Of a stretch of DNA of 64,000 bases, positions 1 through 63,734 are shown piece after piece; within the stretch, counting starts at the first letter, position 1; every line of letters starts with the position of its first letter. Position numbers and translations under genes: made by a program. Origin of the DNA: Octopus sinensis (Eukaryota). Location: contig NC_042998.1 in NCBI RefSeq assembly GCF_006345805.1, forward strand, positions 1,054,001 through 1,118,000, read 5' to 3'. The notes beneath the pieces are model-generated. The model was not told where the DNA came from, searched no databases, and saw only the letters and a list, made by a program, of their open reading frames with translations.

Positions 1-1100
1 GTTTATAAGTTTGTCCTGCGTTAAAATTCTTGTAATATTCAAAATTTCAAAATTGTTATAATAGAAGTGGTTAGGACAGTCATGTACTGGGGGTTAATAT
101 TCTTGTATTTAAACACTTAGTTGTATCCCATTATATCCTGAGTTCAAATTCCGTCAAGATGACCTTTACAGGTTATCCGTGGGAGAGTGTGTCTATAAAA
201 TAATTTCTACAGATCTCGCCAACAAATCCGCGATCTTTTGACGAAGTAAGATACCCATATTTTGAGAGCGACAGGGGTGTGCAAGAAACGATTAACCTTT
301 AATGCCGCGCATTCTGATTTGAAATCTTGCTAACATCGGCTTTACCCAAGACCTAAAATTTGGTGAGTTGGAACCAATGTAAGAAACCAATATTATTTCT
401 GTGTTAGTGGCATAAAGCAAGAAAGGCAAGTCGAATACTCTTCAGTTCTTATCGAAAGGTTAATTTATTCCATTTAAGCTGCTAACAATGTCTTTACAGG
501 AAGTATGGAAGTTACAACAATTCTCTTATTCATTCTTAGAATATAGATTCATGTGTTTAGTTAAAAGAAAATAAATCCTGAGTTGATGTAAGCGTTAAAG
601 TACATTCTCATAAATTAAATTCCAGTCGTTGGTAAAAGAATCAACTGGTATTTTTATAAGTCTTTTCCCAGTAAACTTCGACCAAATCAAAGCAATACTT
701 AAAAACTATTTTTCTTTCAAGAACATTATGATAGGAAGTAAGATTCCAATGAGTTGAGAACAGAGTCTAGCTTTGATTCTCAGTCGATGCCAGTTCACAA
801 CAGTCTCATCACAATTTCCCTTAGGGAAAGAATGAACATCATAATATCCCATTTCTTGCTTCCGTTATGTTATAGGATTTGGGGATATACCTGCCCAAAT
901 TTCTCCAAGGGATTCCAAATAAGCCACCAATGCCAGGATACATCTCAACCAACAACGACTCCCTATTTGAATGGGCCATGATACCACAAAACTTGACTTA
1001 AAAATGATTTAACAGGTCATATCGGGTGGTGCTATTAAATTAGACATGGATTGGGCCAATCAGTGGCCGAAACATATCTACGTTCTCTAAAATATTAATA

Positions 1101-1485
1101 ATCCTTTCTACTAAAGGCACAAGGCCTGGAATTTGGATAAGTCGATTACATCGACCCTAGTGTTTTACTGCTACTTAATTTATCGACTTCGAAAGGATGA
1201 AAGGCAAAGTACACCTCCGTGACATTTGAGCTCAGAACGTAGCGTAGAGCGAAATGCCTATTTCTTTACTACCCACAAGGGGCTAAACACAGAGGGAACA
1301 AACAAGGACAGACGGATTAAGTCGATTACATCGACCCCAGTGCGTAACTGGCACTTATTTAATCGACCCCGAAAGGATGAAAGGCAAAGTCGACCTCGGT
1401 GGAATTTGAACTCAGAACGTAACGGCAGACGAAATACAGCTACGCATTTCGCCCGAAGCGCTAACATTTCTGCCAGCTCGCCGCC
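1101..1485 (-). mobile_element. tRNA-derived SINE family S1 (Deu/Nin-like core), head-to-tail dimer
   Basis: Minus strand reads GGCGGCGAGCTGGCAG head, GAGTTCAAATTCC B-box-like motif, core GCCTTTCATCCTTTCGGGGTCGAT and tail b, then a second head-truncated unit ending in tail a (GGCCTTGTGCC..AGTAGAAAGGAT). Confidence 0.85.
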
Positions 1486-1947: not shown

Positions 1948-2160
1948 AGGGCGGCGAGCTGGCAGAATCGTTAGCACGCCGGGCAAAATGCTTTGTGGCA
2001 TTTTGTCTGTCTTTATGTTCTCAGTTCAAATTCCGCCGAGGTCGAATTTGCCTTTCATCCTTTCGGGGTCGATAAATTAAGTACCAGTTGAGTATTGGGG
2101 TCGATCTAATCGACTTACACCCTCCTCCAAAATTTCGGGCCTTGTGCCTAGAGTAGGAAA
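1948..2160 (+). mobile_element. SINE S1, full length, with 16-bp TSD
   Basis: Same head and core as other S1 copies; AATACTCATTTGTAGC repeated at 1932-1947 and 2161-2176. Confidence 0.92.
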
Positions 2161-13125: not shown

Positions 13126-13341
13126 CATGCGTATAATAAGTGATGACCACTAAGTGGACATCCAATATGCTAGAAGAAGATTATATACGACCTAAGTACA
13201 AAGAAAAGAATGTTCTCTAGAGAAATTCACCAAACACAAGAACAGTTCTCTAGAGAACATTCTTTTCTTTGTAGTTAGGTCGTAGATGATCTTCTAGCAT
13301 ACTGGATGTCCACTTAGTGGTCAACACTTATTATATGCATG
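13126..13341. repeat. Fold-back inverted repeat (~95-bp arms, ~25-bp spacer)
   Basis: CATGCGTATAATAAGTG..GAATGTTCTCTAGAGA and its reverse complement at 13247-13341; TA on both outer sides. Confidence 0.9.
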
Positions 13342-13358
13342 TATATATATATAGACAG

Positions 13359-13408
<50 letters not shown>

Positions 13409-13412
13409 ATAT

Positions 13413-13474
<62 letters not shown>

Positions 13475-13476
<2 letters not shown>

Positions 13477-14200
13477 GTTTCTTTATTGGCCACACAGGGC
13501 TGCACACAGATGGGACAAGTTACAAGGTAGAGCTTTTCTTTTGGGGGATGAAAAAAAGGGGGTGGCGTAGGTTTTCGATCAAGAGGGATCGTAAAAGGGA
13601 AGAAAAGAACAAAGAAAAAAAGAAAAAAATAGAATAAAAAATAAAAAGAATAAAAGAAAGAAAAAAAAGAAAGGGAAAGGAACAAAAGAAAGGAGAAATG
13701 AAAAAAGAAGAAAAAGGGGAAAAAAAGGGGGAAGAGGAAAGAAAAAAAAAGGAACGATCAATAGGGATCATGTATCACAGTGTTATGATATCTGGTGTAA
13801 AGGGGAAAGCAAGTAATGTTTATCCGTGGGAAGAAAAGCCTACGAAAACGACCACGGTAATCTTGGTCAATATTGTTATATGTTACTACATTTGTTTGCA
13901 AGTGGGTACCCTCTGTTTTCAATTTCTGGGTTCATAGGATTATGCTCAAGGTGGCTTCGTCATTCATACGTGCCATCCTTGCTACATTCACCCATCTTTC
14001 GCTAAACAAAACTTGCCTCTCTACTCTCACTTTCCTTTTCAAGTGGTACTTGAAGAAGTTGATGAGAGATTGACCAGAGAGGAAAGTGTTTGTCTCCAAT
14101 CCTTTCAGACGCGTCCACCAGATACATTCTTTCGCCATAGCCACAAGGATGATGAGAATAGCTCTTCCTTCCCGTTTGAAGGAAGGAGGCGTGACAATAT

Positions 14201-14201
<1 letters not shown>
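13475..14201 (-). mobile_element. Tx1-like (L1 clade) LINE 3' fragment inside (GATA)n
   Basis: [31 protein letters not shown] resembles the Tx1-type ORF2 C-terminus; pyrimidine-rich 3' UTR ending GCCAATAAAGAAAC; (GATA)n on both flanks. Confidence 0.72.
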
Positions 14202-14420
<219 letters not shown>

Positions 14421-15419: not shown

Positions 15420-15632
15420 CGCAGCTCTGAGCTGAAACAAGAAAAAAGAACAATATATATATATACATATATTCGACGGGCTTCTTTCTGTTTCCGTCAA
15501 CCAAATCCACTCACAAGCTTTGGTCGGCCCGAGGCTATAGCAGAAGACATTTGCCCAAGGTGCGACGCAGTGGGACTGAAACCGGAACCATGTAGTTGGT
15601 AAGCAAGCTACTTACCACACAGCCACTCCTAC
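15098..15632 (-). mobile_element. tRNA-derived SINE family S2 with internal microsatellite and CR1-type tail
   Basis: Head GTGGTAAGTAGCTTGCTTACCAAC..GGTTCAGTCCCACTGCG; core GCCTCGGGCCGACCAAAGC..GGATTTGG; internal (TA)(CA); tail CAGCATGG..ACTGAAACAAGTAAAAGAGT. Confidence 0.9.
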
Positions 15633-15665
15633 AAATATAATAAAGTAAAGCTACCTATAAATATA

Positions 15666-15754: not shown

Positions 15755-15856
15755 ACAAAGCTTTGGTCGGTCAGGGGCTATAATGGAAGACGCCCAAGAT
15801 ACCGCGCAGTGGGACAGAACCGAAGACCATATTGCTGGAAAGCACTCAACCACACA
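15755..15856 (-). mobile_element. SINE S2 head fragment
   Basis: Matches the S2 head. Confidence 0.65.
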
Positions 15857-16699
15857 CAGATAAATAGACAAATAGACAGAAAGAGAGAAAGAGAGAAACA
15901 TTGATTGCGAGATTGATAAATCGATTGTCTTGACACCTGATGTCCTTGGCCTGATTGTCTGACAGCTAAGGGCACCAAGAGTGGTTGGATTTAGTTATCA
16001 ATTAATAGTCTGATTACATTTATTGTCCAATGTAATCTCTGTTCTACATTTGTTAACGGTAATGAACTTCCGTTGCTAATACTCCAACATGTCTAGTCTA
16101 AGTAAAATAGTGTTGATAAAATTTCTTTTGAGAGGATGTGATGTTTATTTATCAATTATTTGTTAACAAGTAAGGTGGTCTTAGGCGCCGTATGGCAAAG
16201 TGTAAGTTACAGCCATCTACAGACGGTTATTGATTCACAGTTGAAAGCCCCTTCACTACACAACCGATATTAATTTTCTAAGGAAGCATATTAACATGAC
16301 ATGAAAAACAATGTAAAATTGTTTTGTGCTATCCCTACGATCAAAATCGCTTTAGCGACCGTACTGTCATTTGGTGTACTAGAGACTGCATTGTCTAATA
16401 TGGCATTCATTTTTTTAAAGACGATAATATATCATTTTTTTTTTTTTTTTTATTTGAAAGAAAATGTTTATACGATCTCTGACAGATTGATTCACTGCAT
16501 TGAAGTTCCTTCGTTGGCCCGTATAAAGCACAATAGATTGCGTCTATAGTATAGACGCAAACTACTCTGCTTTGTACGGTCGTGATACGTTTTACTATAG
16601 ACTCTATAGTAAAATTTATCACACCCTGACAGTAATTGATATCGCAGTAACAGGAGTAGAGCCTCAACGCCTTTTAGATAATCGACATGATAATAATGG

Positions 16700-16895
16700 T
16701 TTCAAATTTCGGTACAAGTTCAGGGGAGGGGGTAAATTGATTTTATTGATCCCAGTGTTCAACTGATACTTATTTTATCGACTCCGAAAGGATGAAAAGT
16801 CAACTTCGGCGGAGTTTGAACTCGGAACGTAAAGACGGATGAAATGCCGCTTAGCGTTTTTCTCATCGTGCCATCGATTCTGCAAGCTCACCGCC
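16700..16895 (-). mobile_element. SINE S1
   Basis: Head, B-box-like motif and core present. Confidence 0.85.
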
Positions 16896-32473: not shown

Positions 32474-34399
32474 GTGTGAGCAAGCATGCGACTCTTCAGT
32501 TCTACCTGTCTCCTTATTTTGCCATCAGTCTTTTAAATGGTAAATAAAATATATATATTTTTTTTTGATACGGCAATCCTGTCTTCATCCATTTTAAACA
32601 AAAACAAAAAGTATCAAACAACAAAAAGAAGCAACACTCTAGTCTCAACATTACCATGAACCCACCTATTGATTAATTCGATGCCATTAATTACACTTAG
32701 TATTCTTTAAGCACCTTTTTAATCTTTCACTTGAATATCTTTGAAACTTTCTCGCATATTCCACATAGGTTGTCAAGGAGGGGAAGTTTCCCTGTTGTCT
32801 ATTTCCACAGCGGAAGCTTTCTCACGTTAGAATGTACTTAAACATGCCAAATATAACTTTACACACATTTATTATATACAATGTGGTGGCTTGCAACTTT
32901 CCTACACACCCATACGCACGCACGCACGCACACATACACACACATAAACATAGACATAGAAACACACACATATAATTTATATATGTGTATATATGTTGGT
33001 GTATGTATATATATATATATATACAAAGTATGGGGGTTTTACTCACAGGTGAAACGATTAGGCACACTGTAAGCTAAGTGATGTAACGGATTACTGGGGC
33101 TCCAAGGTTATAGCCGAGAACGTAGTTATGGGGCCATTGCAGATTTCCGATGCACCTGATATATAATTGTTAAACAGAACAGTAAACATTAAGGCAGGGC
33201 AAGCATTTCAAGTCGTATTCAATATTATTATAGGAAGAAATTCAAAATCCTACAGCTGCTTCTGGGATATCATACTCGGGAATATTCCAGAAACAGCCGT
33301 AAGATTTACACATATACACATATATGAATGTGTATGTGTCTCTGAGTGTAAGTGTGTGAGTGTATGAATGTATATGTCTCTCTGACTGTGTGTGTGTTTC
33401 CATGTTAGGTACGTTATTAAACACACACACACACACCTATACATACATACACACATGTGACGGCTGACATGCGTGGATGTATGTGTCTCTCTTACTATAT
33501 GTATGTGACTATGTGTGAGTGTATGTGTGCGTATCCTCACATTTTGTATATGAATGTCTGTAAGTGTGTGTGTGTGTGTGTGTGGTTGCGCGCCCCTTAC
33601 GTACGTTATTAAACATTTACATACATCTACACATACATATGTGACAAGAACGGTTGGAGGTGAAACTCTTGACAAAAACGTGGAAGGTCCAACTTATATA
33701 AATCTCTTTTTTGGAAATTATTCTTGGTACCAGAGCTGAAAGTCTATCAAAAGCGACGATTTGCACTCTATTTGTTATCACCAAATCTGATCAATGCATT
33801 CTGTCCTTTCCACAAGAATCCAAATATCATACACTTTATTTAGTGAGATTTCTCCTGTTCCACAGTCAGACGATAATAGAGAATAAAGTGACGTAAAGGT
33901 TCGTCATATCATCCCACTCCTTCGGGTATAACCTCCTCTCAGCTCATTTCTGAGTGACACAGGCCACCTTGTTTGTAACATCTTGCCATTTTTATGCACC
34001 TTGTAATTTGCACTAAATCAGATCCTAAGTATGCTAATTGTTACGAAGGTACAGATAACATACCTGGTATAATGGCAGACACTACTGATCAGCATGGAAT
34101 TTGCTCTCCAGGAACCAAATTATCAACGTTTCCTGGTCAATAGATGTTCAAGTTATCACCTGACAACTGCTTTACTAAGTGCCGACCACCTCGATTTTCG
34201 GTATGTCCGATTCTGTGGTTGTGATACTCTTCAAACATGCTAATTCGACTTTCTGTCTCCTATGTCCAAGTTCGAGTAGAATGGAGTAGAATGCTCTTCA
34301 ACAGCTCCAGCATGGCCAAGTGCCAAACTATACGGAATAATCTAACTCAAAATCATTATGGCTACTGTGGTCAACATCTGTCTTGTAGTCGCCGCTACC

Positions 34400-40664: not shown

Positions 40665-41901
40665 TTGGGTCAGCCCATAAATAATGAAGTGCTTTAAATT
40701 GCATGAACTAAAAGTCGGAGTGAGGACGGGATAAACTACCTGCATCAACTTGCTATAAAAGCAGTTAGTGATTTCACCTTGTACTTATTCTTAGTGAAAA
40801 TATTAAAGAGTGCAGTTCAATTTTAACAGATATTTTTTAAAAGCTATAATGGAAGTGACCAAAGAGCATATTCGGCATATTTTGCTTTATGAGTTCTATA
40901 AAGGCAACAGCGCAACGGAAAGTGCGATGAATATTAGTGCGGTATATGGGGATCAGACAATAAGCGTAAGCCAGTGTCAACGGTGGTTCCAGAAATTCCG
41001 AGTCGAAAACTACAGCCAAGAAGACGAGCCTCGTTCGAGAAGATCTGTAGAGATCAACGAGGACGTCCTTCAAAGTCAAAATAACATCGTAACTGTTGAG
41101 GAACTAACAGGGAAGCTTGGATTTGGTCATTCAACCATTGATCGACACCTGCATGCCATCGGAAAAGCCAGAAAACTGGGTCAGCACGTTCCTCACAAAC
41201 TTTCCGAGTTTAATCGCGCGCAGAGAGTGAATGTGTGCTATTCTTTGCTGACACTTCTCACGAATGAACCTTTTGGTACTGAACAGTGACTGGTGACGAG
41301 AAATGGATACTCAATAAAGATATCAAGCGACGAAGACAGTGGGTAGCGAAAGGAGAAAAACCGGTACCCCAAGCTAAAGAAGGTATTCACCTACGTAAGA
41401 AGTTGTTAACTGTTTGGCGGGATATAAAATATTTAGTCCACTTTGAACGTATAAAACCCAAACCAAATGATAAAAAAGGAGATCTAACAGCGAACAGCCT
41501 GAGCAGCTTAAAGTCAGCGCTAGAAGAAATACGGCCATCTTTGATTTCAGGACGAACGGTGTTCTTCCATCAGGATAATGCTTGGCCACATACAGCGAGG
41601 TTGGAGCAGTTTGAACTGGAATCGATACTCCACCCACCATATTTGCTGGTCATTGCCCCATCTGATTATCATTTATTCCGCAGTGTCCAAAATCATTTCG
41701 ACAGTAAAAATATGAATTCTGTAGACGAGGTCAGAACTGTACTGGAGGAGTATTTTGCATCACAGGCAAGTGAATTATGGAAGAGGGGCCTTGCAAGTCT
41801 ACCAGATAAATGGAAGATCATTGTAGAAAACGAAGGAGAGTATATTTTAGATTGAAAAATAAAGGAAGTATAAAAAACGCATTATTGATAGGATGACCCC
41901 G
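40665..41901 (+). mobile_element. mariner transposon, near full length
   Basis: Imperfect ~26-bp TIRs (TTGGGTCAGCCCATAAATAATG / CATTATTGATAGGATGACCCCG); TA on both sides. Confidence 0.93.
40849..41855 (+). pseudogene. mariner transposase, frameshifted
   Basis: MEVTKEHIRHILLYEF, HVPHKL, TGDEKW, HQDNAWPH, APSDYHLF; frameshift near 41285; D-D spacing shortened to 29 by a deletion. Confidence 0.93.
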
Positions 41902-46623: not shown

Positions 46624-47225
46624 CACGCCTTGTGCATATAGTAGAAAGGATTAGTATTATTATTGTTGTTGTTGTTGTTATTGTTATTGTTGTTTATGAT
46701 GATGTTGTTGATGTTGTTGCTAATGACTCAAAAATTAAGCAAATATCAAGAAAACGAGAATTGATTTCTCAGTTATATTTGCTTAGGACAGTTTTTTCTT
46801 GCTTTATTCTTATTTGCAAAGAAGGGACAATTTCGGGCAGAATAATATTTGACCGAAACTACAGATCGTTTCAAAGCTTTAAATATATAGAAGAAAGTGT
46901 TACGTGGATTGAAGGCTAAGAGTAATAATATGCATGATTAAAAGTAAAGGGTCCTAATGGAAGTAACTCGAAGAAATGAAAGTTTGAATTTGCATAATTA
47001 AGTTAAATAGTAATGTACTGAATTCCATATGCCAAAAAATTCTAAAATAATTACGATTTTCCTCTCAGTCAGAAAAAAGAAAATATTTCAAGAAACCGAA
47101 GATTTATTTTGTAAGGCATTCCGTACATCATCTTGTAACTTAATTATTCATATTCATATTATTGACGCTTTCCGTTATGTCATTTAGTTCTATTTATCAC
47201 ACACATACACACGCACACACACAGA

Positions 47226-49506: not shown

Positions 49507-49712
49507 GATATAAAGTTATAGACATATCGATATTGGTTTTAAATTTTGGAAGAAGGCCAGCAATTTCGATTACATTGAAACCAGTGCTTTACTGGTTTTT
49601 ATTTTACCGACCCCGAAAAGATAAGAGTAAAGTCGACTGCAATGGAATTTGAACTGAGAACCTGGTGGCTAACGAGATACTACGAAGGATTTCGGCCGGT
49701 CTGCTAGGATTC

Positions 49713-49945
49713 TTATTTCTTTATTGCCCACAAGGGGCTAAACATAGAGGGGACAAACAAGGACAGACAAAGGGGTTAAGTCGATTATATCGACCCCAGT
49801 GCGTAACTGGTACTTATTTAATCGACAGCGAAAGAATGAAAGGTAAAGTCGACCTCGGCGGAATTTGAACTCAGACCGTAGCGGCAGACGAAATGCCACT
49901 AAGCTATTTCGCCCGGCGTGCTAACGTTTCTGCCAGCTCGTAGCC
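49713..49945 (-). mobile_element. SINE S1 monomer with tail b
   Basis: Head, core and Tx1-like tail; a degenerate S1 lies at 49530-49707. Confidence 0.9.
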
Positions 49946-50665: not shown

Positions 50666-51253
50666 TGTGTGTGTGTATGTGAGAAAGAGAGAGAGAGAGA
50701 GAGAGAGAGTGTGTGTGTGTGTGTGTGTATGTATGTGGTGTGTATATATATATATATATATATATACAGCAGACAGAGAGAGACAGACAGACAGAATACT
50801 TAGTGGTATTTCTTATGGCTTTTAACGTTCAAATACTACCAAAGTTAACTTTGCCTTTCACACTTTGAGGTCGATAAAATAAAGTTCATTATCATCCCCA
50901 TAAGCATCACCACCAACGGCGTTGGCAGAATCGTTACCACGCCGGAAGAAAATGCTTAACACCATTTTTTTCGACACATTACGTTCTAAGCTCTAATTCT
51001 GCTAAGGTCGACTTTGCCTTTCGCCCTTTCGGGGTCGATAAATTAATTACGAGTGAAACACTGGGATCGATTAAATCAACTACCCCCTCCCCCAAAATGT
51101 CAGGCCTTGTGCTTATAGTAGAAAGGATTATTATTATTATTGTTAATTCCGCCAAAGGGTCGATAAAATAAGTACCAGTTGCATACTGGAGTCGATGTAA
51201 TCGACTTAGCCCCTATTTCTCGAAATTACAGGCCTTGTGCCAAAATTAAGAAC

Positions 51254-62657: not shown

Positions 62658-62932
62658 TAAATGTACAGAGCAAAAATCCTTTAAGAATTTTGTTCGCTGC
62701 TTCATCGATTTTGTCATCCATCAATCTTTATGTAAGCAAAATACGTAAAATCATTTCGAACATAAACAAAAGTCCATACGTTTTGCTAGAAAGTGTTCTC
62801 ATCGACTAAATCGCAATCCACCATACTTGATTTGCATTATCTTATAATGATGCAAACAAAGCAGAATTTGAACTCAGTTTGTAGAGTCGGAAATAGACAA
62901 CGCAAGATATTTTGTCGGATGAGAGGGAACAT

Positions 62933-63350
62933 AAGCGGCGAGCTGGCAGAGTGGTTAGCACGCCGGGCGAAATGCGTAGCCGTATTTCGTCTGGCATTAC
63001 GTTCTGAGTTCAAATTCCGCCGAGGTCGACTTTACCTTTCATCCTTTCGGGGTCGATAAATTAAGTACCAGTTACGCACTGGGGTCGATGTAATCGACTT
63101 AATCCGTTTGTCTGTCCTTATTTGTCCCCTATGTGTTTAGCCCCTCTGTGGGTAATAAAGAAATAGGTATTTCGTCTGCCGCTACGTTCTGAGTTCAAAT
63201 TCCGCCGAGGTCGACTTTGCCTTTCATCCTTTCGAGGTCGATTAAATTAGTACCAATTACACACTGGGGTCGATATAATCGACTTATTCCCTTTTTCTGT
63301 CCTTGTTTGTCCCCTCTATGTTTAGCTCCTTGTGGGCAATAAAGAAATAA
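62933..63350 (+). mobile_element. SINE S1 dimer with 15-bp TSD
   Basis: Two units, both with tail b; GATGAGAG(G/T)GAACAT at 62918-62932 and 63351-63365. Confidence 0.93.
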
Positions 63351-63734
63351 GATGAGAGTGAACATTGAATTGATAGTTTTCGCCATAAGCTGAAGTAATG
63401 CTAGGTTCAGATTTACTTTCTCACACTATAAATACATTTATGTCATGTTTATTTGTGAAAGCAGCTCTCATGTAATATAGTGGCTTTTTTTTTTGTTTCC
63501 CGGGGATGTACCCTTCATGTAGCTTTTGGCTTCTTATGATTTGGATGTGTTAGGTTGGAACTAAAGTCCTGACGCATTTTTGGTATGATCACTTTGAGGG
63601 TACTTTTGCAAAACGCGCAGTAAAATAAGCTAAGTTTTTACATTCTAATGGCATTTTTATTTATTTCTTTGCAGTTTAATGTATACCATAGTGGTTGAAC
63701 TCATATCGATTTTACCCATTTAAAATTAATTTTA

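What the first reader, a model, noticed from the sequence alone, without database searches (positions are those of the whole stretch)
13475..13535. SINE S1 tail b is homologous to the 3' end of the Tx1-like LINE in the same window
Seen: the LINE end CTCTACCTTGTAACTTGTCCCATCTGTGTGCAGCCCTGTGTGGCCAATAAAGAAAC aligns over ~55 nt (roughly three-quarters identical by eye) with the SINE tail CTGTCCTTGTTTGTCCCCTCTATGTTTAGCTCCTTGTGGGCAATAAAGAAA (1259-1313, 49715-49768, 63111-63164, 63296-63348). Known: SINEs borrow 3' tails from the LINEs that mobilise them; Tx1/L1-clade tail sharing is uncommon. The same S1 core also occurs with an unrelated tail a, implying partner switching (inference).
Basis: partly seen in the sequence, partly recalled or inferred. 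Interest (0 to 1): 0.7.

Follow-up and report, generated by a model that had tools for sequence, protein, structure and literature searches.

The report
Octopus SINE shares LINE tail
The last 50 bases of one octopus SINE variant really are the conserved 3' end of an L1/Tx1-type LINE family, so that LINE very probably copies the SINE: an ordinary mechanism in an unusual LINE group.

Summary
The last ~50 nt of the LINE fragment (minus strand, 13478-13527) match SINE "tail b". Single copies give 78-81% identity (BLAST E 2e-6 to 3e-4). The tail-b consensus gives 41/47 plus one 3-nt gap, and no shuffle out of 2000 reached that score.

The match is not a local accident. Four other copies of the same LINE family end in the same module: Octopus sinensis, two in Argonauta hians, and one metagenome contig. 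Their ORF2 C-termini are only 38-70% identical to the window's. In Argonauta, dozens of copies from at least two SINE families carry this tail.

Full-length relatives encode endonuclease + reverse transcriptase + zf-RVT, and their best solved-structure match is human L1 ORF2p. That places the family in the L1 superfamily. Tx1 membership is likely from a published phylogeny but was not shown here; my direct test was inconclusive.

"Tail a" shows no significant similarity to the LINE tail, and no LINE carrying it was found. Partner switching is therefore unproven, and the Argonauta data suggest tail b is the older state.

Three of the four tail-b units in the window are internal to composite SINEs. 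Two of these composites are flanked as whole units by target-site duplications.

Verdict: a real SINE-LINE tail pair, a new member of a known kind, of moderate interest.

The parts
13475..14200 (-). 5'-truncated LINE fragment: last 88 codons of ORF2 plus the 3' UTR. It is the only copy of this family in the window.
   Evidence: tblastn of P0157 gives 65% identity over 92 aa (E 7e-32).
13935..14198 (-). ORF2 C-terminal coding remnant (NIVTPPSF...LSIIL, stop at 13935-13937). It starts just downstream of the zf-RVT zinc knuckle seen in relatives.
   Evidence: 65-73% identity to P0001, P0002, P0157 and P0169.
13478..13527 (-). LINE 3'-terminal tail module, the region homologous to SINE tail b.
13591..13754 (+). 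Secondary insertion of a 164-bp purine-rich tract inside the LINE 3' UTR. It is flanked by 15-bp direct repeats CGATCAA[G/T]AGGGATC at 13576-13590 and 13755-13769. It is not part of the LINE.
   Evidence: The closest relative, L002, has a single copy of the repeat and no tract.
13343..13475 (.). (TATC)n/(AT)n microsatellite directly 3' of the LINE tail.
14201..14420 (.). (TATC)55 microsatellite directly 5' of the truncated LINE. The fragment therefore sits inside one microsatellite.
62933..63165 (+). S1 SINE, full-length unit with tail b (tail 63111-63164). Left half of a b-b dimer.
63167..63349 (+). S1 SINE unit lacking its first ~50 nt, with tail b at the true 3' end (tail 63296-63349). Right half of the dimer.
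62918..62932 (+). 5' copy of the target-site duplication GATGAGAGGGAACAT around the whole b-b dimer. The 3' copy lies at 63351-63365 (14/15 match).
1259..1484 (-). S1 SINE, full-length unit with tail b (tail 1259-1313). Left half of a b-a dimer.
1100..1258 (-). 5'-truncated S1 unit with tail a, joined to the unit above at the same junction (AAATAGG|YATTTCG) as in the b-b dimer. The composite is flanked by ATTATTAATA... repeats in an (ATT)n context.
49714..49940 (-). S1 SINE with tail b (tail 49714-49768). It is followed directly by a diverged 5'-truncated S1-like unit with an a-type tail at about 49545-49713.
   Evidence: no clean TSD found.
1951..2155 (+). Example of S1 with tail a (...TTTCGGGCCTTGTGCCTAGAGTAGGAAAAATA) and a 15-bp TSD ATACTCATTTGTAGC. 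Other tail-a copies are near 16733, 21243, 31474, 39481, 50422, 50923, 51157 and 53673.

Best explanation
Window 13475-14200 (minus strand) is a 5'-truncated copy of an octopod LINE family of the L1 superfamily. ORF2 in this family has an apurinic-type endonuclease, a reverse transcriptase and a C-terminal zf-RVT zinc knuckle. It is probably what octopus annotations call L1-Tx1.

The family carries a conserved ~50-nt 3'-terminal module: ...TCCCCTCTATGTTT-GCCC-CTTGT-GGGC/GGCY-AATAAAGAAAT. The S1 SINE variant with 'tail b' carries the same module at its 3' end.

The most likely reason is the standard one. The LINE's reverse transcriptase recognises this tail on its own RNA ('stringent' recognition). 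A SINE RNA carrying the tail is therefore copied in trans by target-primed reverse transcription, which leaves ~15-bp target-site duplications.

Shown here: the homology, its conservation in independent LINE copies from two octopod genera, its presence on several SINE families, and a TSD directly after a terminal tail b.

Inferred: recognition of the tail by the LINE protein, the LINE-to-SINE direction of transfer, and the Tx1 assignment.
For: 1. Statistics. BLAST E 2e-6 to 3e-4. Consensus score 55 against a shuffle maximum of 36 in 2000. The profile finds only the LINE end and the four tails in the window.

2. The tail belongs to the LINE. The tail-b consensus matches the ends of L004, L005 (O. 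sinensis), L006 and L007 (A. hians) at z = 7.3-14, with 0/500 shuffles reaching the score (sequences). These copies' ORF2 C-termini are 38-70% identical to the window's. The last 50 nt are 74-91% identical pairwise, which is at least as conserved as the coding sequence at 66-80%.

3. Family identity. Full-length relatives have Exo_endo_phos + RVT_1 + zf-RVT. Their best PDB match is human L1 ORF2p, E 5e-68 over residues 4-856.

4. Several SINE families use the tail. A. hians loci hold dozens of copies from at least two SINE families ending in GCCCTTGTGGCTAATAGAGAAATCTAT. One of these families is S1-like in its core.

5. Use as a terminus. The b-b dimer ends in tail b and is followed at once by a 14/15 TSD.

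6. A small hairpin (GGCC/GCCC - CTTGT - GGCY/GGGC) is kept through a change on both sides in the octopus SINE. Pairing is 82.6% against 28-41% for slid controls.

7. Literature. All octopus L1-superfamily RT clusters fall in Tx1 in a published tree and by RTclass1 (PMC10294476 supplements). L1-Tx1 is the only L1-group class listed among recently active LINE families in O. vulgaris (PMC13282606).
Against: No experiment or genome-wide consensus was available. The evidence rests on one LINE copy in the window, four elsewhere, and four SINE-b units.

Three of the four tail-b units are internal to composites. One composite ends in tail a, so in Octopus the b tail may now be mostly a passenger.

The thermodynamic support for a structured tail is negligible: RNAalifold gives -0.24 kcal/mol, and single-sequence z-scores range from -1.7 to +1.3.

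The tail contains AATAAA, so part of its conservation could reflect a polyadenylation signal rather than RT recognition.

Tx1 membership was not shown. P0153 scores 245 bits against a bivalve 'L1-Tx1' ORF2 and 233 bits against human L1, while that bivalve element scores 330 bits against human L1.
Confidence: 0.78

Rival explanations
1. Chance similarity of two short, low-complexity 3' ends.
For: The region is short (~50 nt) and T/G-rich, and it contains the common AATAAA motif.
Against: 0 of 2000 shuffles reach the observed score. BLAST E-values go down to 1.7e-6. The same module recurs at the ends of four further LINE copies.
Confidence: 0.01
2. Local artefact: at this locus a SINE fragment happened to insert at, or recombine with, the end of a LINE fragment, so the LINE itself has no such tail.
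For: There is only one LINE copy in the window. The region is full of nested insertions and microsatellites.
Against: LINE copies in O. sinensis, A. hians (two) and a metagenome contig have the tail continuous with their own 3' UTRs downstream of intact ORF2 ends.
Confidence: 0.02
3. The homology is real, but in Octopus tail b is now a relic. It survives mainly as an internal spacer of dimeric S1 elements that are mobilised through tail a by a different, unidentified LINE. The b-type LINE partnership is old, and is still dominant in Argonauta.
For: Three of the four b units are followed directly by another S1 unit, and two share the same junction. The b-a dimer is flanked as a unit by repeats and ends in tail a. 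Tail a is about three times as common in the window. The 21-kb O. sinensis locus holds no S1-b copy.
Against: The b-b dimer ends in tail b with a clean 14/15 TSD, so tail b has served as a terminus. The sample is far too small for frequencies.
Confidence: 0.3
4. Reverse direction: the LINE family acquired its tail from a SINE.
For: Sequence similarity alone does not give a direction.
Against: The tail is present in LINE lineages that differ by 30-60% in protein sequence and come from two genera. It is attached to at least two unrelated SINE bodies in Argonauta. One LINE origin explains this more simply.
Confidence: 0.05
5. Tail a is also a diverged version of the same LINE tail, so S1-a and S1-b use two sublineages of one LINE family rather than unrelated partners.
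For: Tail a has GCCTTGTGCC at the position where the LINE tail has GCCCTTGTGGCC. It then has an A-rich stretch and (ATT)n. LINE copies L004, L007:4827 and L007:11167 also end in (ATT)n. The best pairwise z reaches 4.0, with 3/500 shuffles as good.
Against: Most pairwise tests are at chance. The profile search gives only E = 3.1 for one tail-a copy. No LINE with tail a was found.
Confidence: 0.25

Closest known systems
Stringent-type SINE/LINE pairs with a common 3' tail (for example eel UnaSINE1/UnaL2; tortoise Pol III SINE/CR1; tobacco TS/RTE), as reviewed in PMC3747384
   Same: A co-terminal stretch of ~50 nt is shared by the SINE and LINE 3' ends. The tail is more conserved than the rest of the 3' UTR. 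A small hairpin may be present. Short repeats follow the tail in some copies ((ATT)n). TSDs are present.
   Different: The LINE here belongs to the L1 superfamily, where such pairs are rare. Nothing has been tested experimentally, and the predicted structure is weak.
L1-clade SINE/LINE tail pairs: maize/sorghum ZmSINE2 and ZmSINE3 with LINE1-1_ZM, and Chlamydomonas SINEX-3_CR with L1-1_CR (PMC3747384)
   Same: The LINE is of the L1 group, has a conserved ~45-80-nt 3' end, and shares it with tRNA-type SINEs.
   Different: Those three cases are in plants or algae and end in poly(A) or poly(T). This one is in an animal, has no poly(A), and ends in AATAAAGAAAT with or without (ATT)n.
SINEU / Tx1-Mar in crocodilians (Kojima 2015, PMC4494074)
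   Same: A SINE is attributed to a Tx1-group LINE partner.
   Different: That link rests on shared target preference and shared U1/U2-derived 5' heads, not on a shared 3' tail. Here the link is the tail, and SINE insertions show no obvious target specificity (the TSD GATGAGAGGGAACAT is not a repeat).
Microsatellite-targeting Tx1-clade LINEs (Kibi (TC)n, Koshi (TTC)n, crocodilian Tx1 in (TTCC)n; PMC4494074)
   Same: The window copy sits inside a (TATC)n array. Short LINE and SINE fragments sit inside (ATT)n arrays (window 46627 and 51157; L007:4827).
   Different: There is only one LINE copy per context. Other copies (L005, L006) and the SINE-b dimer lie in non-repeat DNA. Microhomology priming on a repeat explains the pattern as well as endonuclease specificity does.
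Octopus SINEs annotated as tRNA-Deu / tRNA-Core (OR1, OR2 and OK of Ohshima & Okada 1994; PMC8967140)
   Same: Abundant octopod SINEs with motifs resembling A and B boxes and a conserved central core.
   Different: I could not match S1 to a named family. ARAGORN and Rfam find no tRNA in it.

Membership tests
SINE/LINE pair with a common 3' tail | Statistically significant, co-terminal similarity between the SINE 3' end and the LINE 3' end | tested here: met
SINE/LINE pair with a common 3' tail | The tail is a property of the LINE family (independent copies or consensus), not of one locus | tested here: met
   L004, L005, L006 and L007 all end in the module
SINE/LINE pair with a common 3' tail | The SINE is a retroposon: dispersed copies with target-site duplications | tested here: met
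   15-bp TSDs at 1951-2155 and around the b-b dimer; at least 14 copies in the window
SINE/LINE pair with a common 3' tail | SINE head derived from a Pol III gene (tRNA, 5S or 7SL) with an internal promoter | tested here: inconclusive
   Box-like motifs are visible by eye (TGGCAGAATCG ... GAGTTCAAATTCC), but ARAGORN and Rfam give no tRNA hit
SINE/LINE pair with a common 3' tail | Trans-mobilisation of the SINE by the LINE protein through the tail | not testable with these tools
   Needs a retrotransposition assay
L1 superfamily of non-LTR retrotransposons | ORF2 with an N-terminal APE-type endonuclease, RT and a C-terminal Cys/His motif, and closest similarity to L1 ORF2p | tested here: met
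   Met for full-length relatives, not for the window fragment itself: Pfam domains; human L1 ORF2p E 5e-68 against R2 at E 1e-18 to 8e-21. The window fragment links to them by 65% identity over its 88 codons
Tx1 clade | RT-domain phylogeny groups the element with Tx1 references rather than with L1 proper | tested here: inconclusive
   No phylogeny was possible because no named references came back. The bit-score comparison was uninformative. A published tree and RTclass1 place all octopus L1-superfamily clusters in Tx1, but identity of this family with those clusters was not checked
Tx1 clade | Target-sequence-specific insertion (typical of the clade, not universal) | tested here: inconclusive
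   The window copy lies in (TATC)n and some fragments lie in (ATT)n, but L005, L006 and the SINE-b TSD are in unique sequence
Structured (stem-loop) stringent LINE tail | A conserved hairpin supported by compensatory changes and by folding energy | tested here: inconclusive
   A 4-bp hairpin is kept with one change on both sides (GC to CG in the four octopus SINE copies, so probably a single event). Pairing is 82.6% against 28-41% for slid controls. Consensus energy is about 0, the longer stem is not supported, and single-sequence folds are unremarkable

The most novel reading that the evidence does not exclude
An animal L1/Tx1-superfamily LINE lineage uses stringent, tail-specific template recognition. 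It has kept the same ~50-nt 3' module since before Octopus and Argonauta diverged. It is the autonomous driver of several octopod SINE families, and so of part of the octopus-specific SINE expansion. This would be the first described animal example of a shared tail between a SINE and an L1-group LINE.
Probability: 0.45. Interest if true: 0.6.

Novelty: new member of a known kind. Interest (0 to 1): 0.45.

Why it matters
SINEs are among the largest repeat classes in octopus genomes: about 11.6% of the O. vulgaris genome (PMC13282606) and about 40% of transposable-element content (PMC8967140). The LINEs that drive them have not been named in the papers I could search.

A shared, conserved tail points to a specific L1/Tx1-type LINE family as the driver of at least one S1 variant in Octopus, and of the dominant SINEs seen in the Argonauta loci.

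It would also add an animal case to the very short list of L1-group LINEs with sequence-specific 3'-end recognition. That bears on whether 'relaxed' poly(A) recognition in mammalian L1 is derived.

The mechanism itself is textbook.

Tried and rejected
1. The word-index protein search with the 89-aa remnant gave a single hit. The exhaustive profile search was needed to reach relatives.

2. I tried to name the clade from source annotations.

3. Direct Tx1-versus-L1 test. I took the bivalve consensus LINE_T.granosa_5#LINE/L1-Tx1 from a paper's supplement and translated it to an intact 1266-aa ORF2. P0153 scores 245 bits against it and 233 bits against human L1, while the bivalve element scores 330 bits against human L1. 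The test is uninformative.

4. Tail a against the LINE tails: pairwise shuffles were mostly at chance and the profile gave E = 3.1. I dropped my early idea that tail a is demonstrably the same tail.

5. I searched for a LINE carrying tail a. There was none in the window or L005, none in the supplements of the octopus LINE paper, and the exact 26-mer had no hit in metagenome contigs.

6. The metagenome scan with the b-type 18-mer returned 38 loci. Almost all look like chance matches in unrelated DNA, and none has a related ORF.

7. A longer 12-bp stem-loop suggested by single-sequence folds is not supported on the alignment. A second hairpin (ATAGA-GAAA-TCTAT) is seen mainly in Argonauta copies and was counted together with the first.

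8. ARAGORN and Rfam on the SINE found no tRNA.

9. Exact-protein look-ups of two window ORFs, done to identify the source genome, found nothing on record. The species is not established; the repeats are octopus-like.

10. No convincing TSD was found around the 49545-49940 composite.

Full report
**What is at the coordinates**

The finding's interval lies on the minus strand. Read 5'->3' on that strand, window 14200->13475 is a 5'-truncated LINE fragment.
- It starts with 88 codons of an ORF2 C-terminus ([34 protein letters not shown]...LSIIL), with the stop at 13935-13937.
- A ~460-nt 3' UTR follows, ending in ...GCAGCCCTGTGTGGCCAATAAAGAAAC.
- The fragment is flanked on both sides by the same microsatellite: (TATC)55 at 14201-14420 and (TATC)n/(AT)n at 13343-13475.
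- It is the only piece of this LINE family in the window. Nothing in the window itself can therefore say 'Tx1'.
- A 164-bp purine-rich tract (13591-13754) inside the UTR is a later insertion. It is flanked by a 15-bp direct repeat that is single-copy in the closest relative.

- A full S1 SINE copy used as a BLAST query finds the LINE end at 81% over 42 nt, E 8e-5.
- The LINE fragment used as a query finds three tail-b copies at 78-81% over 42-50 nt, E 1.7e-6 to 2.6e-4.
- The majority consensus of the four tails aligns with 41/47 identities and one 3-nt gap. Both sequences run to their 3' ends. The score is 55, against 18.6 +/- 2.8 (maximum 36) for 2000 dinucleotide shuffles.

**Is the tail the LINE's own?**

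The 89-aa remnant had one relative in the word-indexed database. An exhaustive profile search found 205, and a second indexed search gave longer members. These included proteins from Argonauta hians (P0166, P0026), Octopus sinensis (P0179), an unnamed NCBI assembly (P0157, 912 aa) and metagenomes (P0154, P0169).

I fetched the DNA around them. Every contig that reaches the 3' end of the element ends in the same module:
- L004...TTTCCGGGCCCTTGTGGCCAATAAAAGAAATC(ATT)n
- L005, O. sinensis...TGTCCCCCTCTATGTTTGGGCCCTTGTGGCTAATAAAGAAATTGG
- L006, A. hians...CTGTGTCGGCCCTTGTGGCTAATAAAGAAATCTAT
- L007, A. hians...GTCCCCTCTATGTTTTTGCCCTTGTGGCTAATAAAAGAAATAATT

The tail-b consensus scores z = 7.3 to 14 against these four ends, and 0 of 500 shuffles reach the score. 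Their ORF2 C-termini are only 38-70% identical to the window's. The terminal 50 nt are 74-91% identical pairwise, at least as conserved as the last 240 coding bases at 66-80%. That comparison is rough, because gapped global alignment inflates the baseline.

The 'SINE-derived cap at this locus only' reading is therefore rejected.

**More SINEs use this tail**

A fuzzy motif scan of the two 21-22-kb A. hians loci found dozens of SINE copies ending in ...TCTGTGTTCGGCCCTTGTGGCTAATAGAGAAATCTAT. They come from at least two families with different bodies.

One family has an S1-like core. The octopus S1-b query aligns from its core through its tail at ~72% over 130-150 nt, E down to 2e-12.

The combination 'S1-type core + b-type tail' is thus shared by Octopus and Argonauta. 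This makes b the likely older tail of S1 and makes the partnership old. The age of that split was not checked.

**What kind of LINE**

Full-length relatives (~1150 aa) have Exo_endo_phos + RVT_1 + zf-RVT. Their best solved-structure match is human L1 ORF2p, E 5e-68 over residues 4-856. R2 proteins come far behind at E 1e-18 to 8e-21. That places the family in the L1 superfamily.

I could not run a clade phylogeny, because no named Tx1 or L1 references came back.

As a substitute I took a bivalve consensus labelled LINE/L1-Tx1 from a paper's supplement. P0153 scores 245 bits against it and 233 bits against human L1. The bivalve element itself scores 330 bits against human L1. The test is uninformative.

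Indirect support for Tx1:
- In Martelossi et al. 2023, all O. sinensis and O. bimaculoides L1-superfamily RT clusters sit in the Tx1 clade next to Tx1_XT and Koshi, and RTclass1 calls them Tx1. The L1-proper clade there holds only reference sequences (PMC10294476 supplements).
- L1-Tx1 is the only L1-group class listed among recently active LINE families in O. vulgaris (PMC13282606).

I therefore call Tx1 likely but untested.

**Tail a**

At least ten S1 copies end instead in ...AAATTTCGGGCCTTGTGCCTTTAGTAGAAAGGATT(ATT)n, or in the variant ...GGCCTTGTGCCAAAATTTGAAAYCAAT.

They share a GCCTTGTGCC core with the LINE tail, at the equivalent position. Like L004 and two L007 LINE ends, they are followed by (ATT)n.

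The similarity is not significant. Pairwise z is mostly below 3 and at best 4.0, and the profile E-value is 3.1. I found no LINE with tail a.

'Unrelated' is thus fair as a description. 'Partner switching' remains an inference with an unknown second partner.

**Composite elements**

Each of three tail-b units is followed immediately by another 5'-truncated S1 unit.
- Two composites share the same junction (AAATAGG|YATTTCG).
- The b-b dimer at 62933-63349 is flanked as a whole by a 14/15 TSD, GATGAGAG[G/T]GAACAT.
- The b-a dimer at 1100-1484 is flanked by ATTATTAATA... repeats in an (ATT)n context.

So a dimeric S1 subfamily exists in which one tail b is internal. Only the right-hand unit of the b-b dimer shows tail b acting as a true terminus. 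This tempers any claim that b is currently the working tail in Octopus.

**Structure**

On 39 aligned tails, a 4-bp hairpin (GGCC-CTTGT-GGCY in LINEs, GCCC-CTTGT-GGGC in the octopus SINE) keeps pairing through a change on both sides. This is probably a single event. Together with a second small hairpin it gives 82.6% paired cells, against 28-41% when the partners are slid, and 15 double-change cells against 5.2 in shuffles.

The consensus folding energy is essentially zero. A longer stem is not supported, and single-sequence folds are unremarkable. The structure is suggestive only.

**Context from the literature**

- Shared SINE/LINE tails are the classic basis of SINE mobilisation.
- For L1-clade LINEs they are rare: 3 of 58 catalogued pairs, all in plants or a green alga, despite more than 800 L1-clade entries (PMC3747384).
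- For Tx1, the SINEU/Tx1-Mar link rests on shared targets and shared heads, not on tails (PMC4494074).
- I found no paper naming the LINE partner of octopus SINEs. Repbase entries could not be consulted.

**Verdict**

The LINE is of the L1 superfamily and probably Tx1. The partner-switching story is unproven. The finding is a new member of a known kind, of moderate interest.

Noticed in passing
window 62918-63365 and 1100-1525: Dimeric S1 SINEs: a full unit with tail b joined to a unit lacking its first ~50 nt, with the same junction in both. Each dimer is flanked as a whole by target-site duplications. This suggests a dimeric subfamily, or template switching during reverse transcription.
   Followed up: partly
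window 13576-13769: A 164-bp purine-rich low-complexity tract is inserted in the LINE 3' UTR, flanked by a 15-bp direct repeat (14/15). The closest relative (L002) has one copy of the repeat and no tract. It looks like a heavily truncated retro-insertion.
   Followed up: partly
window 13343-14420: The LINE fragment sits inside a single (TATC)n microsatellite, with arrays on both sides. Likewise, a ~30-nt tail-a fragment at 46627 and the SINE at 51157 sit inside or against (ATT)n arrays. This could mean microsatellite targeting or microhomology priming.
   Followed up: partly
window 13141-13330: A near-perfect long inverted repeat (arms of about 85 nt, ...CCACTAAGTGGACATCCAATATGCTAGAAG...) lies next to the microsatellite. 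It looks like a foldback or MITE-type element.
   Followed up: no
window 40810-41855 (+): Two adjacent ORFs match the Mos1-type HTH (HTH_48, E 6e-21) and a mariner transposase DDE fragment (Transposase_1, E 1e-7). This is a decayed mariner-family DNA transposon.
   Followed up: no
window 15540-15640 and 15780-15870 (-): Two copies of a different SINE-like repeat with a CORE-like motif (...CACCTTGGGCAAATGTCTTC...), by eye. Possibly the octopus tRNA-Core class.
   Followed up: no
window 33869-33988 (-): A weak RT-like tblastn hit to P0157 residues 539-576 (47% over 40 aa, E 5e-4). Possibly another decayed LINE fragment.
   Followed up: no
L006 12262-12283 and 12627-12649: The A. hians LINE copy has two successive 3' UTR/tail units downstream of one ORF2 end. 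This could be a tandem tail duplication or a nested truncated copy.
   Followed up: no
L006 and L007 (many sites, e.g. L007 5177, 5334, 15207; L006 5125): Argonauta tails end in ATAGA-GAAA-TCTAT, a 5-bp hairpin with a GAAA loop. A few copies have ATGGA-GAAA-TCCAT instead, which changes both sides. Octopus tails lack this feature.
   Followed up: partly
[quoted passage not shown]: This bivalve L1-Tx1 consensus also ends in ...GGGACAATAAAAATAC..., which recalls the octopod ...GGGCAATAAAGAAAT. It may be no more than a shared AATAAA signal.
   Followed up: no
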